Shown: piece by piece, positions 1-37,790 of the stretch
How positions within the stretch are numbered: the stretch's first letter is position 1
Layout of the letters: every line of letters begins with the position of its first letter
Source of the DNA: Octopus bimaculoides
Lineage: Eukaryota
Direction: 5' to 3'
Length of the DNA stretch: 43,355 nt
Assembly (NCBI RefSeq): GCF_001194135.2
Contig: NC_068983.1
Coordinates: forward strand, 8,443,791-8,487,145
Notes under the pieces: generated by a model
Database searches by the model: none
Seen by the model: the letters and a program-made list of their open reading frames with translations, nothing else
Told to the model about the DNA's origin: nothing
Translations under genes and position numbers: made by a program

Positions 1-230
1 TTTGAACCAGTTGAAGACACACGAGATGTCGAAATATCGTTCACCAGATAACAAATGGCACTCTTCTTTTAATTTTGACTCTATATCTTCAGGAGGAGTT
101 ACCTCAATCCTTTCTATATTAACCAAAATGAAGTAGATTGACAAATTTATTTTTTGAACCAGTTGAAGACACACGAGATGTCGAAATATCGTTCACCAGA
201 TAACAAATGGCACTCTTCTTTTAATTTTGA
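1..230 (+). repeat. 78-bp exact direct repeat (1-78 and 153-230, period 152 bp); candidate Penelope pseudo-LTR tandem
   Basis: TTTGAACCAGTTGAAGACACACGAGATGTCGAAATATCGTTCACCAGATAACAAATGGCACTCTTCTTTTAATTTTGA occurs twice. It is followed by (TAT)n and lies about 450 bp upstream of a Penelope-like ORF remnant. The repeat is certain; the pLTR call is inference. Confidence 0.75.
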
Positions 231-2217: not shown

Positions 2218-4054
2218 NNNNNNNNNNNNNNNNNNNNNNNNNNNNNNNNNNNNNNNNNNNNNNNNNNNNNNNNNNNNNNNNNNNNNNNNNNNNNNNNNNN
2301 NNNNNNNNNNNNNNNNNNNNNNNNNNNNNNNNNNNNNNNNNNNNNNNNNNNNNNNNNNNNNNNNNNNNNNNNNNNNNNNNNNNNNNNNNNNNNNNNNNNN
2401 NNNNNNNNNNNNNNNNNNNNNNNNNNNNNNNNNNNNNNNNNNNNNNNNNNNNNNNNNNNNNNNNNNNNNNNNNNNNNNNNNNNNNNNNNNNNNNNNNNNN
2501 NNNNNNNNNNNNNNNNNNNNNNNNNNNNNNNNNNNNNNNNNNNNNNNNNNNNNNNNNNNNNNNNNNNNNNNNNNNNNNNNNNNNNNNNNNNNNNNNNNNN
2601 NNNNNNNNNNNNNNNNNNNNNNNNNNNNNNNNNNNNNNNNNNNNNNNNNNNNNNNNNNNNNNNNNNNNNNNNNATATATATATATATATATATAAGCATA
2701 CACACACAGACACATGCGCATATATATTTATTTGTAGTTGTATCTGCATCTACCTATATGTCTTTATACATGCACACAAACATACAGTCACACACAACAC
2801 ATACAAACATTCACACGTACACCTAAACACACACAGATACATCCATACATATATATGTGTGCGTGTTTGTGTATTTGTGTGTGAGTGTGGTATATATATA
2901 TACATATACCAGTAAATTATTGGCGACGATTCATTTGACTTAAACACTTTCACCCACCAAATTATATGACCTCATGCCAAAGTTAGAAAACATCATTATT
3001 GATGCCTTTGGTAAACATTTGTCTGCCAACTAACACAACCCAGGTGTAATACTTATCGAAGAAAAACTTGTTGTTGCTCATACAGTTTTATTTTATTTAT
3101 TTTTTTAAAGTTGTGGATAAAGTTGTTGTTTTCATGCTATATTTAACAGACTTCGCTTTCTCTTTTTGTTATGCAGCGAAATTTATATTGTCTGAAATTT
3201 TATTGGCGTCAACAAAGCGAAGAAAATATGTCAAACCCGATAAACATTTAAATGTTTTGCGAGATTCTTTCTCTTGTTACCGCTGCCGTTGTTGCATTAC
3301 ATTGAAAAAAGAAAATAGTACTTTCAAGTAAATATTGTTGAGAAGTGAATACACCGAAGGTTAGAAATCTAAATGCTTCTTACATATAAACATTCATATC
3401 TGAATATGATGCATATAAATTAAACATACACAAGCTGAATGAAATAGAAAAAAACAGATAAAACAAGGATATATTTGTTTTGCCTGAAAATCAAATAAAT
3501 TATAGCACTTTACTTTTTACAATAAAACACTAAACCTTTCATTTTAAAATAGAAGAAAGTAATACATAAAATAGAGATTTTTTTTGTTTCATACAGTCAT
3601 ATCTATTCTTTAGATTATTGATCTAAGTTTGAATATCCGGCTGAATTATGTACAAAACACGATGTGTATTCTCAATCAAGAATAGGATTCAATCTGGATA
3701 AAAGAAACTACAAAGCTGTATAAAAGTTTACATTATTTTTTTATTGACATCGTAAAACATGAAATGTTTCCATCTTTTTCCTTTGATTCTAATGAGAAGA
3801 ACCAACGTGGGACTACCTAGACACTCAAAGGATCTATTAAAAAAAACACCTAGATATCTACTACGCCTCACTCTTCCGTCATAAAACAACCCGTAACGGA
3901 AAACAGTTTCTAGATTTAAAACAACTGCCCGAATTAAAATGGAATGCTAAGGATTGAAGTCTTCTCAATCACAGCCTTCATGTGGCTAAACAACAACAAT
4001 GACAACTCATGTCCAACTCTATTGAAAATATATATTTGGTATATTTTTGAATGT

Positions 4055-7712: not shown

Positions 7713-8998
7713 GGCTATACACACACTGAAAAAAGAGAGAGAGAGAGAGAGAGTGTTAGAAGAAGTAGAATGCAGAATGAAATGATGCGTTCGTACTACT
7801 TTTTGCACGACATTGATGGAAATTTCGAGAATAAAGAAAGTTTGCTGAGTTTAAAAAGAATCGAAGAATTAAGTAAGTCAATGGAATCTATGACACAATT
7901 TAAAATATATTAATATCGAAATCAAATAAAATGGAAACTTTTCTGAAAGCTAGAGAGAAAATTCAATTAATATTTGAGAAATTCTTGCATATGATATTAG
8001 AATTACGAAAAATGTAAGGCAACATATTAATATTTACTTATTTGTTTCTTGTCAGCTAGTCTCACTGCCATTCTGTCATTATTTCTTGTAAGTAATTAAA
8101 GAATGTGAATTATCATAAGATCCGATTCTGTTTCAGTATTGTGCAACTGATACGTTCATCTCACATCAATGTCATTCTGGATTCGATAACATTGCATACG
8201 CTTCTGCAAGAATTTTCCAACATAGCCAAAGTGTCGTGAAAGAATTTTTTTGTAAACGAATTCATTGAGGAAGGCTGTCATATATAATCCAACGTACATT
8301 AATATACACCGACACATATACATATGAAGAGACGCTCGGACATACACACACCACGCTCACACACACACACACACGCACACACNNNNNNNNNNNNNNNNNN
8401 NNNNNNNNNNNNNNNNNNNNNNNNNNNNNNNNNNNNNNNNNNNNNNNNNNNNNNNNNNNNNNNNNNNNNNNNNNNNNNNNNNNNNNNNNNNNNNNNNNNN
8501 NNNNNNNNNNNNNNNNNNNNNNNNNNNNNNNNNNNNNNNNNNNNNNNNNNNNNNNNNNNNNNNNNNNNNNNNNNNNNNNNNNNNNNNNNNNNNNNNNNNN
8601 NNNNNNNNNNNNNNNNNNNNNNNNNNNNNNNNNNNNNNNNNNNNNNNNNNNNNNNNNNNNNNNNNNNNNNNNNNNNNNNNNNNNNNNNNNNNNNNNNNNN
8701 NNNNNNNNNNNNNNNNNNNNNNNNNNNNNNNNNNNNNNNNNNNNNNNNNNNNNNNNNNNNNNNNNNNNNNNNNNNNNNNNNNNNNNNNNNNNNNNNNNNN
8801 NNNNNNNNNNNNNNNNNNNNNNNNNNNNNNNNNNNNNNNNNNNNNNNNNNNNNNNNNNNNNNNNNNNNNNNNNNNNNNNNNNNNNNNNNNNNNNNNNNNN
8901 NNNNNNNNNNNNNNNNNNNNNNNNNNNNNNNNNNNNNNNNNNNNNNNNNNNNNNNNNNNNNNNNNNNNNNNNNNNNNNNNNNNNNNNNNNNNNNNNNN

Positions 8999-9282: not shown

Positions 9283-9292
9283 NNNNNNNNNN

Positions 9293-9334
<42 letters not shown>

Positions 9335-10577
9335 GGAGATATTGTCAGTGAATGCATGTGTGTTTCTGAAAGGTTTAAATTTTGGACGTTTGCTGCAAGT
9401 TAAATATATACACATTTTTATATAGTCACACAGGAAATCCATAATTTACGTTAATTTATTTCAATTACAACACTTGTCATTTCTCCAACTACTTTCTAAT
9501 TAGTTCTACAACAATCAATGCCGGCGTATTTGGCAATGACTTTAGATGTTGTATATAGAAGTTAACATATGAGTGTGTAGTTATGTATGTACATATATAC
9601 ATAAATATATGCTGTCATCTCTTTAATAGGCTCGATTAGTTTTCCACTCTCTGATCCTCTGTGTAAAGCGCCTTCAAGATAACAAATAACTACACTATTA
9701 TATCGAATCGAAGACACTTCTTCTCAAATATGGACGAGTCTCTTCTTGTAGTCCTCTAATTCTCGACAACAACAGCGATCGGATCATCACGGCTGCGCCT
9801 TTGAATTCTACAACCTCATTGTGCACTCAGTCGAGCGGAAACTCCAAAAGGATAGTTATCTATTTTTTCCGTATCATTCAAGATTTGTGAATCGAGTATA
9901 TTTTAGAGAACATTTTTCTTGGTTGCTGAAATATTTCTGCTTTAGGAAGTTGCTGAGACGCTCTATAAAGACAATAGTTTGTCGATGGAGATATAAGTAG
10001 CCTAGGAATTAGTTTCGAGGCGTTACTTGATTCGCTTGCAAAACTGGTTATGAGGCATTGTTATATAGAACAATTGCTTCTTTTCGAATTGACAGCAATG
10101 GACATATATTCAGCAATCCTTCTTAAATATTGTCAATATCATGGTGGTAATTTTTTTCTGGTGGGAAGGCGTATCGCCTAGCCTATGGATATCATTCATA
10201 ATGTCACAAGTTAGATTCTTGACACGGAAAACACATTGAAAAAAAAGGCATTAAATATCAGGTTGCTACTGAATAACATGAAGTAAATAATTTCCAACTA
10301 AATGATGTTGAATCCCTCTCCCTCTTTCTCCCTGTCTTTTCCACTTCCCACCTCTCTCCTCCTTTCACCCACTCTAGCAGTTATATATTGGATGTGTAGC
10401 TGGGTCATTCANNNNNNNNNNNNNNNNNNNNNNNNNNNNNNNNNNNNNNNNNNNNNNNNNNNNNNNNNNNNNNNNNNNNNNNNNNNNNNNNNNNNNNNNN
10501 NNNNNNNNNNNNNNNNNNNNNNNNNNNNNNNNNNNNNNNNNNNNNNNNNNNNNNNNNNNNNNNNNNNNNNNNNNNNN

Positions 10578-11516: not shown

Positions 11517-12404
11517 ATAATTATATATATATATATATANNNNNNNNNNNNNNNNNNNNNNNNNNNNNNNNNNNNNNNNNNNNNNNNNNNNNNNNNNNNN
11601 NNNNNNNNNNNNNNNNNNNNNNNNNNNNNNNNNNNNNNNNNNNNNNNNNNNNNNNNNNNNNNNNNNNNNNNNNNNNNNNNNNNNNNNNNNNNNNNNNNNN
11701 NNNNNNNNNNNNNNNNNNNNNNNNNNNNNNNNNNNNNNNNNNNNNNNNNNNNNNNNNNNNNNNNNNNNNNNNNNNNNNNNNNNNNNNNNNNNNNNNNNNN
11801 NNNNNNNNNNNNNNNNNNNNNNNNNNNNNNNNNNNNNNNNNNNNNNNNNNNNNNNNNNNNNNNNNNNNNNNNNNNNNNNNNNNNNNNNNNNNNNNNNNNN
11901 NNNNNNNNNNNNNNNNNNNNNNNNNNNNNNNNNNNNNNNNNNNNNNNNNNNNNNNNNNNNNNNNNNNNNNNNNNNNNNNNNNNNNNNNNNNNNNNNNNNN
12001 NNNNNNNNNNNNNNNNNNNNNNNNNNNNNNNNNNNNNNNNNNNNNNNNNNNNNNNNNNNNNNNNNNNNNNNNNNNNNNNNNNNNNNNNNNNNNNNNNNNN
12101 NNNNNNNNNNNNNNNNNNNNNNNNNNNNNNNNNNNNNNNNNNNNNNNNNNNNNNNNNNNNNNNNNNNNNNNGAACGACCCGTCCTCGTTTTCTTTGTATC
12201 ATCTATCTGGATGTTTTGTTCTCCCTATCTTGCGTAGCCTAACTGTCTGGATATTTTGCGTTCTTGTCCCATTTTGTATATATATATATATATATATATA
12301 AAACAAAACTTTTCGATGAACGCGAGCGTGAATCTCCGAGTAACGCTTTTTTGTTATATTTTTGCTGCTTTTAAATAAAGTAAATATATATATATAAGCA
12401 TATA

Positions 12405-14768: not shown

Positions 14769-16724
14769 NNNNNNNNNNNNNNNNNNNNNNNNNNNNNNNN
14801 NNNNNNNNNNNNNNNNNNNNNNNNNNNNNNNNNNNNNNNNNNNNNNNNNNNNNNNNNNNNNNNNNNNNNNNNNNNNNNNNNNNNNNNNNNNNNNNNNNNN
14901 NNNNNNNNNNNNNNNNNNNNNNNNNNNNNNNNNNNNNNNNNNNNNNNNNNNNNNNNNNNNNNNNNNNNNNNNNNNNNNNNNNNNNNNNNNNNNNNNNNNN
15001 NNNNNNNNNNNNNNNNNNNNNNNNNNNNNNNNNNNNNNNNNNNNNNNNNNNNNNNNNNNNNNNNNNNNNNNNNNNNNNNNNNNNNNNNNNNNNNNNNNNN
15101 NNNNNNNNNNNNNNNNNNNNNNNNNNNNNNNNNNNNNNNNNNNNNNNNNNNNNNNNNNNNNNNNNNNNNNNNNNNNNNNNNNNNNNNNNNNNNNNNNNNN
15201 NNNNNNNNNNNNNNNNNNNNNNNNNNNNNNNNNNNNNNNNNNNNNNNNNNNNNNNNNNNNNNNNNNNNNNNNNNNNNNNNNNNNNNNNNNNNNNNNNNNN
15301 NNNNNNNNNNNNNNNNNNNNNNNNNNNNNNNNNNNNNNNNNNNNNNNNNNNNNNNNNNNNNNNNNNNNNNNNNNNNNNNNNNNNNNNNNNNNNNNNNNNN
15401 NNNNNNNNNNNNNNNNNNNNNNNNNNNNNNNNNNNNNNNNNNNNNNNNNNNNNNNNNNNNNNNNNNNNNNNNNNNNNNNNNNNNNNNNNNNNNNNNNNNN
15501 NNNNNNNNNNNNNNNNNNNNNNNNNNNNNNNNNNNNNNNNNNNNNNNNNNNNNNNNNNNNNNNNNNNNNNNNNNNNNNNNNNNNNNNNNNNNNNNNNNNN
15601 NNNNNNNNNNNNNNNNNNNNNNNNNNNNNNNNNNNNNNNNNNNNNNNNNNNNNNNNNNNNNNNNNNNNNNNNNNNNNNNNNNNNNNNNNNNNNNNNNNNN
15701 NNNNNNNNNNNNNNNNNNNNNNNNNNNNNNATATATATATATATATATATATAGATATATATATATATTTGCGTACAGAAGCATACAGATAACGGCAAGA
15801 AACAATACAGAATGACAAGCCATAATATATGATAGGCGTCATTCTTCTCTCGACGCCACTACCGTCGTTTCCTTCGTACTGTGCTGATACTGTATGTATT
15901 ATTGTGGGAGAATTGACACTAAAATCTGATTCAAGGTGTATAATGTACAACGGCTTTGTATTGTCTATTTACTGCTGTCAAATTTGTCACTTTATTTGTC
16001 TGAATAACTGTGATTACATCTGACTTATTCAGGCTGGAAAGAAACTACTATATAGCATAGCCACGAGATATATGGTCAGTCACTCCGCTAGAAATAACAG
16101 TGAAGGAAACCTTACAACATAAGCTAGATTCTTGAATGAAAATAAAACAAATAATTAAATCCGTTGGATAATGTAAGTGAAGATTTTACTGGCTGTTTTC
16201 AAGGTGATTATGGAAGGGACCATTGTGATCTTGAACTTGCTCAATATGTATCAAACGCGGCCTAAACATAACAACAATATTACAGGCAATGTGCTGACAA
16301 ATGATGAGAAGCTAATTAAAAAGTCCCTTGCGTTTAATACATGACATTGTACCCGGCGCCTAACTGAATAGACTATCCTTTACCATAATAATAATTCCGA
16401 AATAGGAACAAATAAAGTTATAGTTGATGAAATCAAGCGTTCTATTCAACTAGTAATTTCCTGTATCTAATCGGAAAGAATAAAGGGCACATCTACCTCT
16501 TGAATATTACGACGAAGCGCAGAAAGAAGCCTACGTGAAAATTGCAAGGTATTCTGTCCAATGCTTTCGAATTTTTGTCATCTACCGCTTTGAGAATACT
16601 ATCAACATTTACTGAAACACAAACAAAGCATAAAACAAAATGTAGAGAAAAAGTCACGTACAGATCATTATATTGATTACGGATTTGTCTAGAGATTATT
16701 TTATGGATCGTTAAATGCGCAATC

Positions 16725-16886
16725 GTGGCTGTGTTATTTCGTCCTTTTCATCCTTTCGCAGCCGATGAAATACGTAGCAGTTGAACGCTTGGGTCGATTT
16801 AATTGACTTATCCCAACCACGAAACTGGTAATCGACCTACCCCCTCTCCCGAACTTGTTGTCCATGTACCAAAATTTGAAACCAAT
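16725..16886 (+). mobile_element. SINE family C body and tail
   Basis: CCTTTTCATCCTTTCGCAGCCGATGAAATACGTAGCAG...GGGTCGATTTAATTGACT...CAAAATTTGAAACCAAT is reverse-complement homologous to 36533-36650. Confidence 0.7.
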
Positions 16887-19470
16887 ACCTGGTGCTTCCG
16901 TTACTGTATGATAGTAACTGTACTATACTATCTTAGTTATCTGCATTGCCCTCTTCATTCTATGAATATATTCGTATGGTCGTTCCCTACAAAGGTCCAT
17001 CATTGTAAACTACATTTAGATGGTATCTTTATAAGTTTTCACTTATATTCCAGCTGCTTAAATTAGATTGGAACGAAGCCAAAAATATTGATTTCAATTC
17101 TAGTTTGGCATTCCGTTACATTTTGATCTATTTTCAGTCTTCTTAAAATTCCACTATCGAAAACTACTTCAACAATGCTGAAGTAGATATTACTTGAATG
17201 TTAGTATGAGACTGATTATTGCAGTCCTACGGCCTAGTGTACCTGTAATGAAATAAAATTATATTAATTTTCCATAACCTATAGGTAATGTTGGAGCATC
17301 ACTGAAGTAAACTTCATTTACTCGAACTAATGAGGAGACATCTATCAGTCTCACGACCTGTTAGATTTGGCAGTAAGAGCTCCAACACCGTTGAAACGGA
17401 GAAGGATACATTGGAAATTGTAGTCGTATATACTCATAAAGAATAGCATGATTAAGATTGGAATATCTTCAACTAGTACATCAAAGAAAACTATTGGACA
17501 TATAGAAAAACCGAAGAGCGCATCAACATTGTAGTCATGCACTTGACATTTCTTTTGATTTCTTTCGTCATTAACAAACGTATGTCTAAACTGACCTCTA
17601 CGGATACAGTATCAACTTTTTATATTACTACGTGGTTTACTTTATTAATGTAAGCAGTGGTTGTACAATATATTGCTAATACCTCGTCTGCTTACTGCGT
17701 TCAAATGTTATCAATGGAAAGAAAGGAGAGTGGCTGCATTTGAGGATTCCCCGAGTCTCCTTTTTATGCTTAAAACAGATGAGGACTAATGCAGTGTCTT
17801 CAAATTTTTGATACCAAGGCGAAAGAATCTCGCGCCTGAATTTCATTGTACTAGAAGCAATGTAATCAGAAGGCAGTCGTTGTGTGCTTCACTAGTCTTA
17901 ACGCCACTAAACCAAAGAATAGCTCCTCAATTAAATAGAATCTAACCTACCTATTTACAATGAGATCATGAACTGAATATTGCACCTTATGTCGATATTG
18001 TTATTGCAGTAGAGTCCAACAAAACATACCTGTCAAGAACTTCATTCAAACTCTGAGAGTCCAGATTGTGTTTCAGATATTACGTAACATGTTACATTTC
18101 GTATAATGTCTTCATTTCAACAGAATAGACTCTGATTTGATGAGGGTTTTTTTTGTCCACATTGGGCAACTTCCAACGAGAAGTCACATCACTGGCTTCT
18201 TGAAAGTTCAATCATTTTAAAATTGTTTGATTAAAATTAACTAAAACACTCTTCACAATTTATGTATCGCTGAAATGCAGCGAATATGGGTTACATGTTT
18301 TTGTAGGATATTTATCTGATGATCTTACTTCACTACTCCTACACATCTCTATATCCATATATTTTCCACATTTTACTTAAGAATAAATACGTAAATTGGG
18401 ATGTTGTGTGCTTAGATATGCAGGCACATGCAAAATGTATTAACATTTAAAATGAATTTAAGCAAAGAATTGACACTAAATCACTTGTCATCTAAAGAAG
18501 GAAATAAAGCTCTCAGTTGCTAGTAATGTTTTCAGATGCATGAACTAGGAAAGGAAATTAGATTATTTAAATTTCTGAATCTTGCGAAAGCTTGAGCTAC
18601 GCAAATGAAATTAGGAAAGGAACAACTTGCCAAATTTATGTGATATATGCTGTTAAGATGCATTAAATTTTTCTTTAAGCTGTGTTACATAAAAGGGAGC
18701 AGCTATTTTAGTATTGAGTAGATAACATGGTTCAATATGCTTTCTCATTCATTCGTCTCCTTTACATTTCTAAGTCTTTTCTATTAAAACTTCTGAAATT
18801 AGTATACACAAATATTAATTGTTTAGTACATATTTAGAGGCAATCGCAAAGTAATAAGAAATCTGTCTGAAATAACAACCATAAAGCTGTTATCTCATAC
18901 GATTTTAAATGCAAGAGCTGAATCATTCTAAAAATTAAAAAAAAGACGAAAGAATACTGACGGTATTGTTACGGCTGGAATACTGTAGCTCAGATAACTG
19001 CTAGTTGAGGATTTATATGGGAGTAGGCGGCAAAAAAGCAGAACAAATGCAACACCATAGCACCAAGAATTCCTAAAGTGAGGTGAAGGATCAACCAAGA
19101 ATATCAATCAACTTAACTGCCAGCTCAATCGCAATTCCCAAATGAAGCTATTCCAGTTTACTTGCATCTCCTGAGTAAAGACGAAAACTTCTTTAAAGAA
19201 GACTGGATCATTAAAGTTGACCTGTGTGTCGTATTCAGGGTGGTAATTGGATAACTTAGACGAGAAGAACTTAACAATCTTCATCGTATTGATATAGAAC
19301 AAGAGCACATTTGATTCAACTAGTATGTTGATTTTGCTTTTTCATGAATTTCCGCAATAGAAATGTGGCCGTACTGGAGCAAGTCTTTCTGTAGTATAGT
19401 CGACCATATATTAGAACTCTTATTTTATGTATCTCTATTTATCGAATCGGTAACTACCTGAAATAAAGGG

Positions 19471-19519
19471 ACACACACACGCACGCAAGCACACACGGAG
19501 GCACGAACGCATGCACGCG

Positions 19520-19575
<56 letters not shown>

Positions 19576-19577
19576 CA
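19471..19577. repeat. (CA)n tract with an embedded (CG)6 run (19516-19527)
   Basis: Direct reading; alternating purine-pyrimidine tract. Confidence 0.95.
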
Positions 19578-19625
19578 AATAAAAGAGAAAGTATGAACGT
19601 AGAAATATATGTATTTATGCATATA

Positions 19626-21241
19626 CGAGGTTGGACAAAATAATCGATACACATTAAAATTTTAAACAAATTTATTTTAATATGGAGTAGGAACATCTTT
19701 AGCAGTAATTACAGCTTGAATTCTACGATATATGAACTCGTACAACACTTAAATTGTTTCCAAAAGAATTTTTGTCCATTCTTCAGCTAAAACAGATACC
19801 AGTTCTTGTAGTGATGATGGTGGAGGATACCGACTCTAAAATGCACCATAAATGTTTAATAATATTAAGATCTGGGGACTGCGGTGGCCAGATAAGACGT
19901 TCAGCTTCACTAGAATGTCCCTCGTGCCATTCAGTAACAACCTTAGCTGTCTGAATTGGTGCATTATCATCCTGAAAATAACGGAAACATCTAGCATCAT
20001 AGCATCATCATTTTATAATATCTATAAAACCGTCAAAAACTTGTCTATTTTTATATCTTTTGATTTATTATTAGTATTGGTTAATATGTTTTGCTAAAAT
20101 TGCTATTTGTTTTCAGATATCCTCACGAAAAAGTAATTAAAATTCATTAAAATGACAGATCCATCGGACTTTCAAAGAGGTCAAATTGTTTGTGCTCGGA
20201 TGGCAGTTACTGGCGTAACGAAAACAGCCGAACTGTTTGTTGTATCAAGAAGTCCTGTCTCAAAAGCAATGACAGCATTTGAGAAAGAGGGAAAAAACCT
20301 CCTCCTTGAAACAAACTCCGGAAGAAATCCAAAGCTTTCACATAGGGACCGTCGGACTCTTACGCGAATTGTTAGAAAGGATCACTAAAGGACAACTCCC
20401 AAAATTACTGCGGAGTTTAATGACCACCTCGAGAACCCAGTTTCCACAAAAAATGTTTGCCGGGAACTAAACAAAGCCGGATTTCACGGGAGGACTGCAT
20501 TCAGAAGACCACTACTTTCAAAACTAAATGTTGCAAAGCGTTTGGAGTGGAGTAAAAAAAACCTACAGAGTCGGACCCTTGAGCAGTGGAAGAATGCTAT
20601 TTTCTAGGACAAGTCAACCTTTACCTTATTTCCGACCACAGGCCGAGTATACATGTTGAGACAGCCAAAAGAAGCATGTGACCCAGACTGCCTTCTTCCA
20701 AGTGTTAATCATGGAAGAAGATCTGTTATGATCCGAGGGCGGAGCTATATCTTGGAAATCCGGCGGCACTATGGCTTCCTTTCATGGCAGAATTAATAAT
20801 CAAGACTATTTATGCATTTCATCTGGTCAAATTCATCCTATGGTAGCGGAACTGTTTCCGGAGGAAAAACGCAATATTTCAGGATGATAATGTACCAATT
20901 CACACAGCTAAAGTTGTTACGGAAAGGCACGAGGAACATTCTAGTGAAGTTGAACATCTTATCTGGCTACCACAGTCCCAGATCTCAATATTATTGAACG
21001 TTTATGGTGCATTTTAGAAAACAATTAAGGAGTCGATATCCTCCATCATGATCACTACAAGAACTGGAGACTGTTTTAGCTGAAGAATAAACAAAAATTC
21101 TTTTGGAAACAATCCAGGCTTTGTACGAGTCCATGCCTCGTAGAATTCAAGCTGTAATTAATGCCAAATGCGTTCCTACCCCTTATTAAAATTAATTTGT
21201 TTGAAATTTTAAGGTGTTTCTATTATTTTGTCCAACCCCTG
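19626..21241 (+). mobile_element. Full-length Tc1-like DNA transposon (1616 bp), TA target duplication, long inverted ends
   Basis: TA at 19624-25 and 21242-43. The left end reads CGAGGTTGGACAAAATAATCGATACAC and the right end (reverse complement) reads CAGGGGTTGGACAAAATAATAGAAACAC. A transposase remnant lies inside. Confidence 0.95.
20152..21189 (+). pseudogene. Tc1-family transposase pseudogene, DD36E spacing
   Basis: MTDPSDFQRGQIVCARM...NSGRNPKL (paired-like HTH region), IF*DKSTF (WSDE-like, first D at 20608), FQDDNVPIHT, QS(P)DLNIIE and a C-terminal ...VPTPY*. Several stops and frameshifts. Confidence 0.95.
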
Positions 21242-21242
21242 T

Positions 21243-21354
21243 ACATACGTACATACATTCGTACACACATACACACACGCGCTAGCGCACACGCACTAGC
21301 GCACACGCACACACACACGCGCGAGCGCACACGCACACACACATGCACGAGCGC

Positions 21355-21403
<49 letters not shown>

Positions 21404-21410
21404 GATACAT
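21243..21410. repeat. (CATA)/(CA)/(CG) compound microsatellite
   Basis: Direct reading; forms the right flank of the Tc1 element. Confidence 0.95.
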
Positions 21411-21759
21411 AGGATTCTGTATTTGATATTTCTTTAAAATATCTCAAATATATTTCTTTTAACCAATAAGACAAATAGTTACAGCTGACTAATTAAGATA
21501 TTGGCATTTTTGCCTGACGAGACAAAAATATATTGAAAGATAAATCAATCAACTGTCAGGTAACTGTTTGTGACCAAGGATATTCATTTCCTGTAAGTGA
21601 CAGTGTACTGTGTCCACGGATCTTAATATTTATTGCTCACTTGACTGGAAATTCGAGTTTGTTAATTTCAAATCAACCGTAACCAAGCTGTCATGTGATA
21701 TAAAGATATTCCGGACACGGTGCTCCTGTGTTTTATCAGATGTGGCATACCTATGATTT

Positions 21760-22080
21760 GCCACTTTGGCAGTTATGACGACGCGGGTTTTTGTTGTTCC
21801 GATCAAAGTAACAGCCTTATCATTAAACGAAAGTGTAAGTGGTTGAGCACTTCACAGATACGGGTGCTGTTAACTTAGTTCTCCAGGCGATTCAGCGTGA
21901 CAAAGGATGCGACAAGGTTGGTCCTTTGAAATACAGGCATTACTTATTCTTGCTAGTTGAGTAGACTGAAGCAACAAGAATTAAAATGTCGTGCTCAAGG
22001 ACACAGCGCCCTGCCGGTAATCGAACACGCGACCTTACGATCGCAAAACGAATATCCTGAACACTACGCCACGCGTCTTC
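21760..22080 (-). mobile_element. tRNA-derived SINE with family-A-like head and a different tail
   Basis: The reverse complement reads GAAGACGCGTGGCGTAGTG (A box)...GTGTTCGATTACC (B box)...GCTGTGTCCTTGAGCACGACATTT...GCTTCAGTCTACTCAACTAGC. Confidence 0.75.
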
Positions 22081-22264
22081 TTATCATGTGTCATTATATT
22101 AAATATATACCTGAGTGATTTGGCGGCTACTTTTTGTAGTTCAGTTGATCGCACTACGGTTCCATTGCGTAACCGAATTCTGCTGCTGATAGCCGGCAAT
22201 CGTGAGTGTCTTTAGAATTATTTAACCGTTTCTCAGCAGGCGGTATGCTAAAGTTACTAGTGTA

Positions 22265-22833
22265 CGAGGGTGAGTCAAAAATAATGCCATTTTGTTTAGG
22301 ACAGGTATAATTATTAACAAAGGAACATTTATCATACATCAAAATGAAGCTGGTCCGCTGTGGATCACATCCCTACTTCTCAACATAGTCACCGTTTCTC
22401 TCAATAGCAATGTTCTACCTTCGAATGAGAGCATGTATCCCTGCTCCGTAAAATTTTGTTGACTGTTCTTTGAGCCAATTCTTCACTACAGTTTTTCACT
22501 TCCTCGTTACTGGAATAATGTTTGCCTCTCAAACCCTCTTTCATGGGGCCGACGAGATAATAGTCTGAAGGCGTTAAATTATTCCAGTGACAAGGAAGTG
22601 AAAACTGTTGTGAAGAAGTGGCTCAAAGAACAGTCAACAGAATTTTACGGAGCAGGGATACATGTTCTCATTCGAAGGTGGTACATTGCTATTGAGAGAA
22701 ACAGTTTACTATTTTGAGAAGTAGGGATGTGATCCACAGAGGACCAGCTTCATTTTGATGTATTATACATGTTCCTGTGTTGGTAATTATACTTGTCCTA
22801 AACAAAATGGCATTACTTTTTGACTCAACCTCT
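22265..22833. mobile_element. Mariner-derived fold-back element (~570 bp) with ~255-bp inverted arms
   Basis: It starts TA|CGAGGGTGAGTCAAAA and ends TTTTTGACTCAACCTC. Arms 22265-22520 and 22579-22833 are inverted repeats. The minus strand of the left part translates as PSDYYLVGPMKEGLRGKHYSSNEEVKTV...GIHALIRR*NIAIERNGDYVEK*, the mariner transposase C-terminus (one 1-nt insertion). Confidence 0.93.
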
Positions 22834-23776
22834 AACACAAAAGTTGCTTGGATGAGTGTCACTAAATGGCATGGTTTCTTTTAGGATATTCTCCGTTGTC
22901 TTTGGTGTTGACAAGATCCTACCACTTCGGTTTTGTGACAAGCATACTAAGAAAAGACATGTAACTACTCTGCGCGTTACATATCTGCAGACTTCATAAA
23001 TATAGCAAATTTATACGATTGTTGTCTTGGTCTAAAATACCAGGTTCAACTTTTTAATATGATCATGGGAGTTACAGTGTTTTTAATGTCTATGCTCGCG
23101 CATCTTGGCAAATCAGTATCTCAAAATTTCTGTCCTAAGAACATTTTTGGTAAGAAGACTGATGAGTTCTGTGTTGTATTTTCGTATCAGTGTTTCATTC
23201 TGTAGGTGCAGATTTATGATTAAAAACGTTTCGTGTAAGGGGTCCATCAATGGACGTGTCTGTTACGTTATCATTCTTACCTGCATTAAGTAAAGTAAGA
23301 TGTAATTGAAAAAGATGTTGCTGCTATTTCTTCAAGTTAGAATAGCCATTTAAAAGTCCTTCATCGATTGGTATATGTTGTGCCATTAAATAAAACATTG
23401 AATATCTTCCAACAAATTGTATTAGTAATAAAATAGTAAAATGAAGGTGGGATAGATAGTGATTGATAGATATAGAGATAAATAAATGCATATANNNNNN
23501 NNNNNNNNNNNNNNNNNNNNNNNNNNNNNNNNNNNNNNNNNNNNNNNNNNNNNNNNNNNNNNNNNNNNNNNNNNNNNNNNNNNNNNNNNNNNNNNNNNNN
23601 NNNNNNNNNNNNNNNNNNNNNNNNNNNNNNNNNNNNNNNNNNNNNNNNNNNNNNNNNNNNNNNNNNNNNNNNNNNNNNNNNNNNNNNNNNNNNNNNNNNN
23701 NNNNNNNNNNNNNNNNNNNNNNNNNNNNNNNNNNNNNNNNNNNNNNNNNNNNNNNNNNNNNNNNNNNNNNNNNNNN

Positions 23777-25582: not shown

Positions 25583-28500
25583 GCATCTATGTATCTTTAT
25601 ACACACATATATATATATATACATAATNNNNNNNNNNNNNNNNNNNNNNNNNNNTATATATATATATATATATATATATGTTAATTCTCTAAATTAGGTA
25701 TTAACAGTAACTGCACGATAAAGTGAAGTATATTGCCACTTAAATGTGGCTGACCCATAGGGGTGGATGTTACTGTTGCTTTTAGCCCCAGGAGGACATC
25801 TCCTCCAGCTGGCTTATCGACACACTTCTGGACACAGAAGTCGGACTAAACCCTAGACCATATGGTTACGATCTGAACGTCTTAACCATATAGCCATACC
25901 TATATGTTAGAACAGAAGTATTTACTCGAAAGTAATTTTTGAGAAATCGATCAGACTGAGATAAATAACTCTTTGAAACAAAGTGTTGTGGTTCTGGGGC
26001 TTTCTTAATATTAGAACCGCAGCTGCTGGTAGAATCAATACAAAACAAGACAACATGTGGAGAAGTCACTGGCTTTATCATATTAGAATTATCGCTGTGT
26101 ATTGTGGTCAAGAGACTTCACTTTCATTGTTTCAAGCCATGTAACTGACGATTATTACTGTTGTTTAATCTACGTTTAAGCTTTATCAAAGAGATCTCAA
26201 ACTGAAGAGGACCAGCCGTGACCATACTGTATATGTGTATACACATACTGTTTTAATGTACATCTATTGTTCAACATTTATTTCCTTTTGTTTTGAAGAT
26301 GTTGGTGTATGCTTTAGCAGAAATAAGTGTAGACTACCCAACATATTCTGCTTATTTTGATCAGATCCAACGTATTTCAGCTACAGTTATCCATACTCTT
26401 CCTCAAACCAACCAAACTCAGGACTACATTATTCAATGTGGTATCTTCTAAGAGAGATATTGCTTGATTAAAAAGAGATGGTTGTCTGCTATATCTACCA
26501 TGCAGAGTAACCCCATAGAGGCTTTACCAGAACCACAAAATCATAGCATGGGGCTGTGTCAATATATATATTTATGTATTTTTATTGCCTCCTTAGTCAG
26601 AAGAGGACAGTTCATATCTCTGGTCCCTTCTATTTGTTCAAACATGCCGTGAATGATTTTCAAGGTCCCCATTGATATGCATAATGGAACAATGGGATTT
26701 CCAGTGTCCCTATTTAGGTGGACCCTCCGTTTACATTGCCCCTATTTGTATATTCCTTTCCTCGTCATAGCTAGATAACTTGCGATCACGGTTATGCTGA
26801 AGTGGGGCGAATTGTGAGATGAACATCAATAACATAAACAATGTTAATAGCAAAAAAAAAGAAAAGAAAATCTATATAAAAGACAGCAACAACATCTACA
26901 ACAATTGCAGCTGCAGTAACATGCTGCATCCTCTTATGTTAAAATAGAAAAAGAAAACGTTAGAATTGAAAAATAGAATTCAGAAATTGATTTTATTTTT
27001 CTATTTTAAGAGTATCAAAATTAATTACTTGAGTGATAATACAAAGCGGCTTATAGATATATAAACGCATGGGATCGTTTCCGCACGTATTTACTTTCCC
27101 AGTGAAAGTTCACGAGAAACGTTTATGTAGGTTTCGATGAAGATCAATCTAGATGGTTTAATTTCTATTTAAGAATAAACAATGATATTCTCCCATCCAC
27201 TTCCCACCCCACACCGATAATATTATTTGATGTTTACGTATCATAATGTGCTCGGGTGTCACGTTGACAGGCAGAGTGATAGTTATTAAGTACCATACCA
27301 ATACAACAGCAGATCTGTAAATCTTAAATCTACGGATTTATAATATATACCAGTAGCTACAACGTAGACCTAAAACTATGAGTTTTGTAATATTTTTCCC
27401 ACATGGAAATCCTTTTGGAATTTGATATCAAGAAACAATCTTGTTTTAAAAATGGGTAATACCTCATTCTCCTTCCGATTTTCGGTGGAATGTACTTTTT
27501 TTATCATTTAGGCTAATTTTGCTTGTAGAAAATACAACAGATTTTACGATTCCATAATTCATTCTAATAGAATATATATAAGTATAAGATCTGTGAAAAA
27601 AGCAATAAAAATAGAAAAAAACTAGTCCGTACTCATTGGAAAAAAACAATATGAATTCATTTCCAAAGTAAGCGAACTTCCTTCGTATACGCAATTAATA
27701 ACGTTGGGAAAAGGCGGTGACGTTACGTTTAACTTTCTATCTACAGATTAACAGAAAGTCAGTGTGTATGACATGGTTCCGAAGCAATTACCAATAACTT
27801 CTGGTGCTTCTGTGTTATTCTTATAAAAGTCCCTTTTGAATTAATGCCTTTCACAAAAGCTTTCTCCTAGATAGTTGTTTCGTGTTCTATGAGAAGCGTT
27901 CGTGTATTAGAAAGATAAAAGTGTAAAGTAGCCGAATATAAAACATATGTTTTTTTTTTCCTTCCTAGAAAAGCAAATGAAGTCAGCATTTTAACATTGA
28001 TATTATGAAGAGAAGGGGTGCATCTGTGATGCGAATATATTGTTAAGGGAGCAGTCTTCTCAAAGGACGTGACAGAATGAATATATATATATATATAATG
28101 AATATATATNNNNNNNNNNNNNNNNNNNNNNNNNNNNNNNNNNNNNNNNNNNNNNNNNNNNNNNNNNNNNNNNNNNNNNNNNNNNNNNNNNNNNNNNNNN
28201 NNNNNNNNNNNNNNNNNNNNNNNNNNNNNNNNNNNNNNNNNNNNNNNNNNNNNNNNNNNNNNNNNNNNNNNNNNTATATATATATATATGTATACATATA
28301 TATATATATATATGTTTGTGTGTGTGTATACATACATATATACACACATATGTACATACACACGTATATATATATATGTATATATATGTATATATTACAA
28401 TGATGAAAGACGTAGTTATTTCCAGATCGTGATGTTTCATGTATCAAAATCGTTTGATCAATATTCAGGATGCGCTTTCAGATCAAATGCCGCTGTGGAA

Positions 28501-31630: not shown

Positions 31631-32032
31631 TTACTCTTTTACTCTTTTACTTGTTGCAGTCATTTGACTGCGGCTATGCTGGGGCACCACCTTTAGTCGA
31701 GCAAATCGACCCCAGGACTTATTCTTTGTAAGTCTTGTACTTATTCTATCGGGCTCTTTTGCCGCACAGCTAAGTTATGGGAACGTAAACACACCAGCAT
31801 CGGTTGTCAAGCGATGTTGGGGAGACAAACACAGACACACAAATATATATATATATATATATATATACAGTATACGACGGGCTTCTTTCAGTTTCCGTCT
31901 ACCAAATCCACTCACAAAGCTTTGGTCGGCCAGAGGTTATAGTAGAAGCACTCGCCCAAGGTGCCACGCAGTGGGACTGAACCCGGAACCATGTGGTTGG
32001 TAAGCAAGCTACTTACTCCACAGCCAATCCTG
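31631..32032 (-). mobile_element. Full-length SINE family B with internal microsatellite
   Basis: Near-complete reverse complement of 37356-37790: tRNA-like head at 31960-32032, internal (CA)/(TA) at 31828-31868 and a (GTAAAAGA)n tail. Confidence 0.92.
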
Positions 32033-33646: not shown

Positions 33647-33928
33647 TATTATTATTATTATTATTCAGTAGTTTTATTTTTATAACGTGCTTTCACTTCA
33701 CTACCGAGCGCAGCTCTGTGCGCCTTGGGTATGTGCTGTGGTTTGCTGTGGTGCCCTTATGTTTACTGTATTGAAAGTGTTTTGCGTAGAATGCGTACAG
33801 TACCCAGTAGTGCAATTTTCTGTATGTTATATATATTTGTAAGTCCTGGTGTTTTTGTTATGTATTTGTCTGAATATTTTTTTATTATACCTAAGGCACC
33901 TACTATGATAGGAATTGTTTCTGTTTTT
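33647..33928 (-). mobile_element. 3' end of an R4/Dong-like RLE LINE (C-terminus, 3' UTR, (TAA)n tail)
   Basis: KTETIPIIVGALGIIKK...IQKIALLGTVRILRKTLSIQ* (33928-33763), a ~100-nt UTR, then (TAA)n. The 5' part is lost in the 33929-34413 gap. Confidence 0.9.
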
Positions 33929-35486
33929 NNNNNNNNNNNNNNNNNNNNNNNNNNNNNNNNNNNNNNNNNNNNNNNNNNNNNNNNNNNNNNNNNNNNNNNN
34001 NNNNNNNNNNNNNNNNNNNNNNNNNNNNNNNNNNNNNNNNNNNNNNNNNNNNNNNNNNNNNNNNNNNNNNNNNNNNNNNNNNNNNNNNNNNNNNNNNNNN
34101 NNNNNNNNNNNNNNNNNNNNNNNNNNNNNNNNNNNNNNNNNNNNNNNNNNNNNNNNNNNNNNNNNNNNNNNNNNNNNNNNNNNNNNNNNNNNNNNNNNNN
34201 NNNNNNNNNNNNNNNNNNNNNNNNNNNNNNNNNNNNNNNNNNNNNNNNNNNNNNNNNNNNNNNNNNNNNNNNNNNNNNNNNNNNNNNNNNNNNNNNNNNN
34301 NNNNNNNNNNNNNNNNNNNNNNNNNNNNNNNNNNNNNNNNNNNNNNNNNNNNNNNNNNNNNNNNNNNNNNNNNNNNNNNNNNNNNNNNNNNNNNNNNNNN
34401 NNNNNNNNNNNNNGGAGAGTATTGTAGTTTGCTTGAAGCATCGTGTATTGTTTGTAAAGAATAAACAGTTTTGAATGGTACAACAATGCATTATAATACA
34501 AAAAATGGACTATATACCTGTTGTAACTTAGCTATCTACAGTCCGATGATATTTCGGAATCCAATTCCGTTTTCAGATATTCTAAGAAGCTACTTACCAC
34601 ACAGCTACTCCTACGCCTATGTACATTCGTATATTTTCCATGGCTTTTTTGCAATAACTAATATACACATCTTGAAGTTGTCATAGTCTTTTTGTTGGAT
34701 ATTTCCTTTCCCTATTTCCTACCTATCCTTTGTAAGATTGCAAAAATTACAATCTTTACGTTCGAATCACCTTAAATTACATGAGTGTCGGCTTTGTATT
34801 GCTAACCCTCTGTTTTCCTTAGATCTGATAATATTTCTTCACATCTTCATCATTATAATTACCTGTAGGAGAATAAATTTGGATGATTAAAATGGATTAC
34901 GGCTCAGCTGATGTCCCATAGTGCATATAAGAGAATCAGTGTGCATTACATTGCGGATTTTAACGTATTGTGTTGGAGCTTCAATGTTACATTCATTATA
35001 TGATTGCTTTCCTTCCCTACTAAACCATATTTTATTCACGTTATCTGCGGTGAATTTTCCACGTTTTGTTCAGCGTGTTCCAGCAACCATATCATACTGA
35101 AAGAATAAACCTTTATCTCAAAAGTTAGTTATTGAATACTAATACTATAGAACGCAAAAGTGGTTTAACTTAGTTTTCCAACGTTGATTTGATGCATTAG
35201 CGTATTTACTAGATTCGTCGTAGAAAAAAAAAAAAAAANNNNNNNNNNNNNNNNNNNNNNNNNNNNNNNNNNNNNNNNNNNNNNNNNNNNNNNNNNNNNN
35301 NNNNNNNNNNNNNNNNNNNNNNNNNNNNNNNNNNNNNNNNNNNNNNNNNNNNNNNNNNNNNNNNNNNNNNNNNNNNNNNNNNNNNNNNNNNNNNNNNNNN
35401 NNNNNNNNNNNNNNNNNNNNNNNNNNNNNNNNNNNNNNNNNNNNNNNNNNNNNNNNNNNNNNNNNNNNNNNNNNNNNNNNNNNNNN

Positions 35487-35720
35487 TATAAGCGTGTGTG
35501 TGCGTGCTTGTATGTATATATTTGTTTGTCCCCCCAACATCGCTTGATAACCGACGCTGGTGTGTTTACGTCCCTGTAAATTAGCGGGGCGAGAGAGGCC
35601 GATAGAATAAATACTAGGTTAGAAAGAATAAGTCCTGGGGTCGAATTGCTCGACTAAAGGCTGTGCTCCAGCATGGCCGCAGTCAAATAACTGAAACAAA
35701 TAAAATAAAATAAAATAAAA
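35487..35720 (+). mobile_element. SINE family B, 3' half
   Basis: TTTGTCCCCCAACATCGCTTGATAACCGACGCTGG...GGGGTCGAATTGCTCGACT...CAGCATGGCCGCAGTCAAATAACTGAAAC with a (TAAAA)n tail. The 5' part is not visible; a gap lies immediately upstream. Confidence 0.9.
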
Positions 35721-37562: not shown

Positions 37563-37790
37563 ATGTGTGTGTGTATGTGTGTCTGTTTGCCCCCCCCCCC
37601 TCAACATCGCTTGACAACCGATGCTGGTATGTTTACGTCCCCGTAACTTAGTGGTTCGGCGAAACAGACCGATAGAATAAGTACTAGGCTTACAACGAAT
37701 AAGTCCCGGGGTCGATTTGCTCGACTGAAGGCAGTGCTCCAGCATGGCGGCTGTCAAATGACTGAAACAAGTAAAAGAGTAAAAGAGTAA
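37356..37790 (+). mobile_element. Full-length SINE family B with internal microsatellite
   Basis: GGCGCAGGAGTGGCTGTGTGGTAAG (A box), GGTTCAGTCCC (B-box-like), CORE-like GCACCTTGGCCAAGTGTCTTCT, internal (TA)/(TG) at 37518-37585, a second domain and a (GTAAAAGA)n tail. Confidence 0.93.

What the first reader, a model, noticed from the sequence alone, without database searches (positions are those of the whole stretch)
19626..21241. Tc1 element whose left end is a ~355-bp inverted copy of its own transposase 3' end
Seen: 19626-19980 is the reverse complement of 20875-21241, covering not just the terminal ~50 bp but about 300 bp of coding sequence. Its minus strand reads FQDDNAPIQTAKVVTEWHEGHSSEAERLIWPPQSPDLNIIKHLWCILE. 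By eye there are about 14 differences in ~130 aligned nt, plus a ~13-nt deletion in the left arm. The element therefore has two right ends around an otherwise complete transposase gene. Inference: either a family with very long TIRs overlapping the catalytic domain, or a derivative made by template switching during gap repair. A read-through transcript would fold into long dsRNA covering the catalytic region, which could act as built-in silencing.
Basis: partly seen in the sequence, partly recalled or inferred. Interest (0 to 1): 0.72.

Follow-up and report, generated by a model that had tools for sequence, protein, structure and literature searches.

The report
Rearranged dead Tc1 transposon, two right ends
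This is a single decayed Tc1-type jumping gene whose normal short left end was almost entirely replaced, long ago, by a flipped 352-bp copy of its own right end; this kind of repair accident is already known for these elements, so it is real but ordinary.

Summary
Window 19626-19977 is the reverse complement of 20877-21241: 87% identity, blastn E 1e-117, one 13-nt deletion and two 1-nt indels. TA flanks both outer ends.

The "very long TIR family" reading fails. Directly right of the inner breakpoint (19975-20010) lie positions 13-30 of a canonical left TIR and the left-specific subterminal sequence. Sixteen related copies from other assemblies in which both ends could be read have TIRs of 22-60 bp that stay outside the coding sequence. 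The intact close relatives are about 1.28 kb with a 343-aa DD36E ("Incomer"-like) transposase.

The joint has a 3-nt microhomology (AAA). It links position about 907 of the element, inverted, to position 13-16.

This matches the published template-switch model for the Goblin MITE of the Ozma Tc1/mariner element. [quoted passage not shown] Here, however, the whole element body is kept.

The transposase is a pseudogene with 4 stops and at least 4 frameshifts. The arms are as diverged from each other (12.5%) as from an unlinked copy (11.6-13.1%), so the event is old.

A different, mariner-type element with the same two-right-ends layout lies 1 kb downstream (22260-22838).

Hairpin RNA is predicted if the element is read through.

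The parts
19624..19625 (.). TA dinucleotide flanking the outer left end (target-site TA)
   Evidence: Read directly from the sequence. Relatives also have TA next to CAGGGG termini.
19626..19977 (-). Left arm: an inverted copy of the 3'-terminal 352 bp of the element. It holds a right-type TIR, the 3' UTR and C-terminal coding sequence from FQDDN to the stop. It carries its own private 13-nt deletion, one stop and an E-to-K change at the catalytic E.
   Evidence: Gapped alignment to 20877-21241 at 87% identity. blastn E 1.3e-117. It matches positions 1270 down to 907 of the intact relative L004 in reverse. Translation.
19626..19655 (-). Outer-left TIR copy, now damaged at its tip (C-GAGG instead of CAGGGG). 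It is followed by right-type subterminal sequence.
   Evidence: Printed next to the right end and to the relatives' ends.
19975..19977 (.). Inner breakpoint with a 3-nt microhomology (AAA). Arm homology runs through 19977 and canonical left-TIR homology starts at 19975.
   Evidence: Register-anchored three-way comparison.
19975..19993 (+). Remnant of the canonical left TIR, positions about 13-30 (AAAATAACGGAAACATCT). The first 12-15 nt (CAGGGGTTGGAC...) are missing.
   Evidence: Matches the left TIRs of L004, L002, L037 and L009. blastn to L004 starts at element position 16.
19994..20152 (+). Left-specific subterminal region and 5' UTR. CTAGCATCATAGCATCATCA matches the L037 left end CTAGAATCATAGAATAATAA.
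20153..21188 (+). Transposase pseudogene (HTH_Tnp_Tc3_2 + DDE_3, DD36E spacing) with 4 in-frame stops and at least 4 frameshifts.
   Evidence: Three-frame translation. Pfam E 6.6e-14 and 5.2e-10. 64-70% identity to intact 343-aa transposases. Spacing D243...E280 in relatives.
20877..21241 (+). Right arm: the native 3' end (C-terminal coding, 3' UTR, right TIR), partner of the left arm.
21212..21241 (+). Right TIR (...ATTATTTTGTCCAACCCCTG).
21242..21243 (.). TA dinucleotide flanking the right end.
   Evidence: Read directly from the sequence.

Best explanation
The locus is one old, dead copy of a short-TIR Tc1-type transposon. The family has DD36E, Incomer-like spacing. Its canonical form is about 1.28 kb with 30-bp TIRs and a 343-aa transposase.

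In this copy the first 12-15 bp of the left TIR were replaced by an inverted copy of the element's own 3'-terminal 352 bp.

The most likely cause is a single aberrant repair event, inferred as follows.
1. The element was excised from one chromatid, and the gap was refilled by synthesis-dependent strand annealing from a sister or homologous copy.
2. The strand growing in from the left flank copied the left TIR.
3. It then re-annealed to the identical TIR sequence at the right end in the opposite orientation, and copied 352 bp inward from there.
4. The strand growing in from the right flank copied almost the whole element, down to position 13-16.
5. The two strands were joined by end joining at an AAA microhomology.

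Shown directly: the structure, the left-TIR remnant, the microhomology, the short-TIR relatives and the decay. Inferred: the repair pathway itself.

Today the copy does nothing as a transposon. Its gene is broken and its outer-left tip is mutated. If transcribed across from outside, it would form a roughly 350-bp imperfect hairpin.
For: Structure
- The inverted arm is real.
- Relative to the intact 1277-bp element in L004, the window reads positions 1270 down to 907 inverted, then 16 to 1276 forward.
- Right of the joint the sequence is the left TIR from about position 13, followed by left-specific subterminal sequence. This matches L037, L009 and L004. The outer-left arm carries right-specific subterminal sequence.
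- The joint has a 3-nt AAA microhomology.

Relatives
- Intact or canonical relatives have TIRs of 22-52 bp: L002, L003, L004, L009 and L037.
- Eleven more distant relatives have TIRs of 26-60 bp. None overlaps the coding sequence.

No sign of spread
- No protein fragment in the 5.8-billion-protein set carries the junction residues. All those inspected read ...LFPEGNAIFQDDN.
- The junction 22-mer is absent from metagenome contigs.

Age
- Every disabling lesion in the arms is private to one arm.
- Polarised substitutions are left 19, right 11 and the unlinked copy L008 11. Only 2 are shared by left and right.
- The arms therefore separated while the sequence was still intact, about when the family was active.

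Precedent and recurrence
- The Goblin MITE from the Ozma Tc1/mariner element has both subterminal regions derived from the right end and a microhomology at the joint. Its authors explain it by a switch from left TIR to right TIR during SDSA (PMC3814204).
- A mariner-type element with two right ends lies at 22260-22838.
- Another relative, L005, carries an inverted internal segment.
Against: - No reads or other copies from the source genome could be examined. It is not shown that the junction is unique or that the assembly is right.
- The star-like relationship of the arms and L008 fits equally well with the arms coming from two separate insertions.
- A 3-nt microhomology is also what plain end joining after any deletion would give.
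- The model does not by itself explain why synthesis from the right stopped 12-15 nt short of the template's end.
Confidence: 0.55

Rival explanations
1. Two separate insertions plus a deletion. A second copy landed head-to-head next to the first, at or near its left flanking TA (local hopping). A later deletion, possibly driven by palindrome instability, removed about 925 bp of the second copy and the first 12-15 bp of the first copy. The ends were joined at AAA.
For: - The left arm ends in a proper TIR next to TA, as an independent insertion would.
- The arms are no closer to each other (12.5%) than to an unlinked copy L008 (11.6-13.1%). Only 2 derived changes are shared.
- A 3-nt microhomology is typical of deletion junctions.
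Against: - It needs two events and a chance placement of the second copy right beside the first.
- No trace of intervening flank or of the first 12 nt of the left TIR remains.
- The one-event template-switch model predicts every observed feature and has a published Tc1/mariner precedent.
Confidence: 0.25
2. A propagated long-arm subfamily. Whatever its origin, the two-right-ends form was itself mobile and this is one of many copies, so it would be a real long-TIR lineage.
For: - Both outer ends carried a complete 30-bp TIR with TA. Left and right TIRs are interchangeable in this family; they are 100% identical over 33 bp in L004.
- The ORF was intact when the arms separated, because all lesions are private.
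- Goblin shows that such derivatives can amplify.
Against: - No second copy lies in the 43-kb window.
- None of about 20 related loci has a long arm.
- No protein fragment with the junction residues was found, and there was no junction hit in metagenome contigs.
- These searches barely sample the source genome, so this evidence is weak.
Confidence: 0.08
3. Assembly chimera. The left arm belongs to another copy and was wrongly joined in a short-read scaffold.
For: - The window is a gap-ridden scaffold with 11 runs of N.
- The element belongs to a repeat family.
- No reads could be laid on it.
Against: - No gap lies between 15731 and 23494.
- The joint connects non-homologous sequences with only 3 shared bases. 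Graph mis-joins instead occur inside shared k-mers.
- The arms differ by 12.5%, with a longest exact match of 29 bp, so they would not collapse.
- A second, unrelated element with the same layout lies 1 kb away, and similar structures are documented elsewhere.
Confidence: 0.05
4. Functional silencer, like Mu killer. Read-through transcripts fold into a hairpin covering the C-terminal catalytic region and feed siRNA, piRNA or ADAR pathways. This would have repressed the family in trans.
For: - In the predicted minimum-energy fold of the 1616-nt RNA, 317 of 352 left-arm bases pair with the right arm. Perfect helices reach 29, 26, 23, 23 and 20 bp.
- Precedents exist: Mu killer (PMC3440606) and Ac composite insertions that make dsRNA and siRNAs (bioRxiv 10.1101/2020.01.07.897926).
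Against: - There is no evidence of transcription.
- The element's own 5' UTR and promoter region lies inside the left arm, so its own mRNA would lack that arm.
- No host gene is evident nearby.
- The arms decayed at neutral-looking rates, with frameshifts and a 13-nt deletion. That gives no sign of selection to keep pairing.
Confidence: 0.05

Closest known systems
Goblin MITE family derived from the Ozma Tc1/mariner element of Aedes aegypti (Yang et al. 2013, PMC3814204)
   Same: - Both subterminal regions derive from the right end of the parent element, in inverted orientation and with unequal lengths.
- The joint has a microhomology.
- The parent has short TIRs and TA target sites.
- The authors' model (the nascent left TIR switches to the right TIR during SDSA, followed by end joining) predicts exactly the layout seen here.
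   Different: - Goblin is a miniature element with 54-bp TIRs that lost the coding region and amplified.
- Here the inverted piece is 352 bp and reaches into the catalytic domain.
- The whole remaining element is retained, apart from 12-15 bp.
- The microhomology is 3 nt rather than 6.
- Only one copy is known.
DD36E / Incomer family of Tc1/mariner transposons (Sang et al. 2019, PMC6875036)
   Same: - Intact relatives are about 1.28 kb, encode 343 aa, have roughly 30-bp TIRs and TA flanks, and have 36 residues between the second D and the E.
- The nearest named protein hits are from spiders and a frog, which are host groups listed for Incomer.
   Different: - Phylogenetic placement against reference Incomer sequences was not done.
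- The paper lists no molluscs. The only named close hit to the window's subfamily is an Octopus bimaculoides protein model (P0063).
- The window copy is rearranged and dead.
Mu killer (maize), and Ac/Ds composite insertions made by alternative transposition
   Same: - Both are natural derivatives of a DNA transposon that contain an inverted duplication of transposase sequence plus two copies of one TIR.
- Both can form a long hairpin RNA when read through from outside.
   Different: - Those loci have been shown to be transcribed, to yield siRNAs and to silence active elements heritably. Nothing of the kind could be tested here.
- They belong to different superfamilies (Mutator, hAT) and are from plants.
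- Their origin is alternative transposition or re-replication rather than gap-repair template switching.
Long-TIR Tc1-like elements (Tc3 and the IR/DR group such as Sleeping Beauty or Minos); recalled from general knowledge, not tested here
   Same: They have terminal inverted repeats of hundreds of bp in a Tc1-type element.
   Different: - In those families the long TIRs are non-coding, are family-wide and carry transposase-binding sites.
- Here the long 'TIR' is coding sequence and is present in one copy only.
- A remnant of the true short left TIR lies inside it.

Membership tests
Tc1/mariner superfamily | Transposase with paired HTH DNA-binding region and DDE catalytic domain | tested here: met
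   Pfam HTH_Tnp_Tc3_2 E 6.6e-14 and DDE_3 E 5.2e-10 on the conceptual translation. 64-70% identity to intact 343-aa transposases.
Tc1/mariner superfamily | TA target-site dinucleotide at both ends, and terminal inverted repeats | tested here: met
   TA at 19624-19625 and 21242-21243. Termini are C(A)GGGGTTGGACAAAATAAT, as in relatives.
DD36E / Incomer | 36 residues between the second catalytic D and the E | tested here: met
   Invariant D243 and E280 in the alignment of intact relatives. The same spacing is counted in both arms of the window copy. The E is now K in the left arm.
DD36E / Incomer | About 1.2 kb total length, a transposase of about 346 aa, and 22-32 bp TIRs | tested here: met
   Met for the canonical relatives: L004 is 1277 bp, 343 aa, with a 33-bp TIR, and L002 is 1276 bp. 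The window copy deviates only through the added arm. Description taken from PMC6875036.
DD36E / Incomer | Groups with reference Incomer transposases in a phylogeny | not tested
Goblin-type template-switch derivative | Both subterminal regions derive from the same (right) end of a short-TIR parent, in inverted orientation | tested here: met
   Left arm equals L004 positions 1270 down to 907 in reverse. The right end is native.
Goblin-type template-switch derivative | Microhomology at the inner joint | tested here: met
   AAA at 19975-19977. This is shorter than Goblin's 6 bp.
Goblin-type template-switch derivative | Miniaturised (coding region deleted) and amplified as a family | tested here: not met
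   The full element body (positions 16-1276) is retained. No second copy was found in the window or the searched sets. Genome-wide copy number could not be tested.
Family with genuinely long TIRs | Long TIRs shared by family members, with no separate short TIR inside | tested here: not met
   All 16 relatives whose ends could be read have 22-60 bp TIRs. A remnant short left TIR lies at 19975-19993.
Mu killer-like silencer locus | Inverted duplication of transposase sequence able to form a long hairpin | tested here: met
   352-bp arms at 87% complementarity. 317 of 352 bases pair arm-to-arm in the predicted fold.
Mu killer-like silencer locus | Read-through transcription, derived small RNAs, and trans-silencing of active copies | not testable with these tools

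The most novel reading that the evidence does not exclude
The two-right-ends form may not be a one-off scar. It could be a recurrent, possibly mobile, hairpin-forming class of Tc1/mariner derivatives in this (probably octopod) genome. Two unrelated families show the layout within 3.2 kb. In that reading, read-through transcripts of such elements feed small-RNA silencing or serve as long dsRNA substrates for the very active cephalopod ADAR editing system.
Probability: 0.07. Interest if true: 0.6.

Novelty: new member of a known kind. Interest (0 to 1): 0.25.

Why it matters
This is a clean, fully readable example of how cut-and-paste transposons acquire long inverted arms. The remnant of the original left TIR is still at the joint, so the order of events can be read from one copy. 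It extends the published Goblin model from a miniature element to a full-length one whose arms include two of the three catalytic residues.

Two further points have modest value:
- The DD36E-type family appears to be present in a cephalopod-like genome, and intact copies occur in marine metagenomes.
- A second two-right-ends element of another family sits next door. This hints that the repair outcome is not rare in this genome.

None of this changes current understanding. The copy is dead and no function is shown.

Tried and rejected
- **Sequencing reads.** Spanning reads, copy depth, small RNAs and editing were therefore not examined, and I did not try another route.
- **Inverted duplication running into the flanks** (a fold-back model). 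The local alignment ran about 18 nt past both termini. That similarity is not above background: 8% of random window segments score as high. Both flanks also carry (CA)n on the same strand. Rejected.
- **Nested insertion of one copy into another.** Rejected. The missing first 12 nt of the left TIR are not found outside the left arm, and no element sequence follows the right end.
- **Junction 22-mer in metagenome contigs.** No hits.
- **Protein search seeded with the junction residues CFRY plus the C-terminal consensus.** It gave 142 hits. The 20 inspected were canonical wherever they reach upstream of FQDDN.
- **L009's internal 119-bp inverted repeat.** This turned out to be foreign filler, not element sequence, so it was not counted as another example.
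- **The repeat finder pairs I1 and I2** (2218-2700/11516-11998 and others). These are runs of N, not repeats.
- **Pfam on the C-terminal peptide of the second element.** Nothing useful. The PDB sequence search identified it as a mariner C-terminus.
- **ORFs of at least 90 aa in the window.** Almost all are low-complexity or gap artefacts, and no host gene was recognised.

Full report
**Observation**

The sequence at 19300-21600 contains an element bounded by TA dinucleotides at 19624-19625 and 21242-21243.

- The repeat finder reports three collinear inverted blocks: 19629-19836/21030-21237, 19835-19876/20977-21018 and 19875-19977/20877-20979.
- One gapped alignment covers the whole arms and runs 17 nt past each terminus into the flanks (19609-19977 against 20877-21258). 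It has 321 matches, 47 mismatches and 15 gap columns (87%). The left arm has a 13-nt deletion, and there are two single-base indels.
- blastn of the arms gives E = 1.3e-117.

The alignment's short run past both termini into the flanks is not above background in this microsatellite-rich DNA.

**What the element is**

- The plus-strand gene at 20153-21188 has Pfam HTH_Tnp_Tc3_2 and DDE_3 domains.
- It is 64-70% identical to many intact 343-aa transposases in the protein collection.
- It is a pseudogene, with four in-frame stops and at least four frame changes.
- In the intact relatives the invariant catalytic residues are D152, D243 and E280. That leaves 36 residues between the second D and the E.
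- This spacing, the length, the protein size, the roughly 30-bp TIRs and the TA flanks match the published description of the DD36E/Incomer family (PMC6875036). I did not test phylogenetic placement.
- The only named close hit to the window's own subfamily is an Octopus bimaculoides protein model that has swallowed a fragment of such an element (P0063). Together with the AT-rich, microsatellite-rich, gap-ridden scaffold, this suggests an octopod source. That is an inference, not a demonstration.

**Canonical structure of the family**

- Contigs carrying intact relatives show elements of 1276-1277 bp. They start TA|CAGGGGTTGGACAAAATAATGGAAACACC and have TIRs of 22-49 bp: L002, L003 and L004.
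- Two further copies from a long-contig assembly have the same short ends: L009 and L037.
- Eleven more distant relatives from metagenome contigs have TIRs of 26-60 bp.
- In no case does a TIR enter the coding region.

**The decisive detail**

- Against the 1277-bp element of L004, the window reads positions 1270 down to 907 in reverse (19629-19978). It then reads positions 16 to 1276 forward (19975-21243).
- Right of the joint the window reads AAAATAACGGAAACATCTAGCATCATAGCATCATCA.
- The left end of L037 reads CAGAGGTTGGACAAAATAATTGAAATACCTAGAATCATAGAATAATAA.
- The window therefore still holds the canonical left TIR from about position 13, followed by left-specific subterminal sequence.
- The outer-left arm carries the right-specific subterminal sequence (...CATTAAAATTTTAAACAAATT).
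- Homology to the right arm runs through A19977 and homology to the left TIR starts at A19975. The joint is a 3-nt AAA microhomology.

This copy descends from an ordinary short-TIR element that lost 12-15 bp of its left tip and gained an inverted 352-bp copy of its 3' end. That disposes of the 'family with very long TIRs' alternative as the ancestral state.

**Age and relationship of the arms**

- In a ten-sequence alignment of the arm region the raw differences are: left against right 12.5%, left against L008 13.1%, and right against L008 11.6%. L008 is an unlinked 5'-truncated copy, 86.5% identical to the main body.
- I polarised changes using the seven other sequences. Private derived changes number 19 (left), 11 (right) and 11 (L008).
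- Left and right share 2 derived changes, plus 2 sites where both changed but differently. Left and L008 share 1. Right and L008 share 0. All three share 3-4.
- This is nearly a star.
- Every disabling lesion in the arms is private to one arm. These are the stops, the 1-nt deletion in the right arm, the 13-nt deletion in the left arm and the E-to-K change in the left arm.
- The arms therefore separated when the C-terminal coding region was still intact, about when the family was active. Both have decayed since.
- This excludes a recent duplication. It does not tell a one-copy origin from a two-copy origin.

**Mechanism**

The layout is what the published model for the Goblin MITE predicts. After excision, gap repair by SDSA copies the left TIR, switches to the identical right TIR in the opposite orientation, and extends into the right subterminal region. 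The product is then joined to the other nascent strand at a microhomology (PMC3814204).

Here the strand coming from the right copied nearly the whole element, so nothing but the left tip was lost. I rate this at about 0.55. The underlying claim, that this is a rearranged derivative of a short-TIR element, I rate at about 0.9.

The main rival is a head-to-head second insertion followed by a deletion, at about 0.25. It gives the same end product and cannot be excluded without an orthologous locus.

A chimeric assembly is unlikely:
- The joint connects non-homologous sequences.
- The contig has no gap from 15731 to 23494.
- The arms share no exact match longer than 29 bp.

**Recurrence**

- One kilobase downstream, 22260-22838 is a 579-bp element of a different family. 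Its arms are 22260-22519 and 22578-22838, at 92% identity.
- Both arms encode the last ~50-60 residues of a mariner transposase. The longer, left copy, 67 residues with the centre, matches Mos1 residues 279-345 of 345 (E 7e-8) and SETMAR (E 2e-8).
- The centre continues one of the two copies. That element too has two right ends of unequal length.
- In a relative from another assembly (L005), a 5'-truncated copy is capped by an inverted internal segment. Positions 697 down to 563 are joined to 606-1277.
- Strand-switch products are thus not rare among these elements.

**Is the long-arm form a propagated subfamily?**

I could not search the source genome. The available evidence is negative but weak:
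- There is no other copy in the window.
- The junction 22-mer gave no hit in metagenome contigs.
- The 20 highest-identity C-terminal protein fragments from a search seeded with the junction residues read ...LFPEGNAIFQDDN upstream wherever they reach that far. None reads CFRYFQDDN.
- The close copies L008, L036, L037, L038 and L039 show no long arm.

**The silencing idea**

- A 1616-nt read-through RNA is predicted to pair 317 of the 352 left-arm bases with the right arm. Perfect helices reach 29 bp.
- The arm covers the second D and the E of the catalytic triad, but not the first D.
- Real precedents exist for hairpin-forming transposon derivatives that silence their family: Mu killer (PMC3440606) and Ac composite insertions (bioRxiv 10.1101/2020.01.07.897926).
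- The element's own 5' UTR lies downstream of the left arm, so its own mRNA would not contain that arm.
- Only outside read-through would produce the hairpin. No neighbouring gene is evident, and the arms show no sign of being kept complementary.
- Transcription, small RNAs and A-to-I editing could not be tested.

**Verdict**

This is a real structure, correctly seen. It is best explained as an old, single, dead product of aberrant repair of a short-TIR DD36E-type Tc1 element, and so a new example of a known kind. Interest is low to moderate.

Noticed in passing
window 22260-22838: A second 'two right ends' element of a different family. The arms 22260-22519 and 22578-22838 are 92% complementary. 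Both encode the C-terminus of a mariner (Mos1/SETMAR-type) transposase (...VKKWLKEQSTEFYGAGIH.LIRRW.IAIERN...). The centre 22520-22577 continues the minus-strand copy. The ends read TA CGAGGGTGAGTCAAAAATAATGCC.
   Followed up: partly
L005:4957-5757: A relative nested between piggyBac-like ORF fragments is also rearranged. An inverted internal segment (L004 positions 697 down to 563) is joined to positions 606-1277. This is another strand-switch-type product in the same transposon family.
   Followed up: partly
L001-L004, L036 (contigs from ENA, Logan and TARA metagenome assemblies): Intact, or in L036 nearly intact, 343-aa DD36E-type transposases lie on 1.2-1.8 kb contigs from marine and other metagenomes, in protein clusters of up to 44 members. 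The family therefore seems recently active in some organisms. The 2019 Incomer survey lists no molluscs.
   Followed up: partly
protein hits P0093 and P0119: Two C-terminal fragments of this eukaryotic Tc1 family are annotated as 'transposase [Salmonella enterica]' on 742-bp and 978-bp contigs. These are most likely contaminating eukaryotic DNA in bacterial assemblies.
   Followed up: no
window 2218-2673, 8383-8998, 9283-9292, 10412-10577, 11540-12171, 14769-15730, 23495-23776, 25628-25654, 28110-28274, 33929-34413, 35239-35486: There are eleven runs of N, so the window is a short-read scaffold. The top 'inverted repeats' and several long ORFs reported by the mechanical tools are artefacts of these runs.
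   Followed up: yes
window 31631-31822, 35619-35705, 37599-37790: A SINE-like repeat (…AATAAGTCCTGGGGTCGAATTGCTCGACTAAAGGC…) is present in at least three copies in both orientations, at 84-89% identity.
   Followed up: no
window 33763-33930 (minus strand): An ORF tail reads KTETIPIIVGALGIIKK...IQKIALLGTVRILRKTL and abuts an assembly gap. It looks like the C-terminal end of a retroelement ORF, judged from memory. Pfam gave no hit.
   Followed up: partly
window 1-78 and 153-230: A perfect 78-bp direct repeat with 152-bp spacing lies at the very start of the window. It could be a tandem duplication or an assembly artefact.
   Followed up: no
window 19470-19580 and 21250-21400: Both flanks of the element carry (CA)n/(CG)n microsatellite on the same strand, and relatives (L004, L008) also sit in TA/CA/CG-rich simple sequence. 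This may reflect a target preference or simply the genome's microsatellite load.
   Followed up: partly
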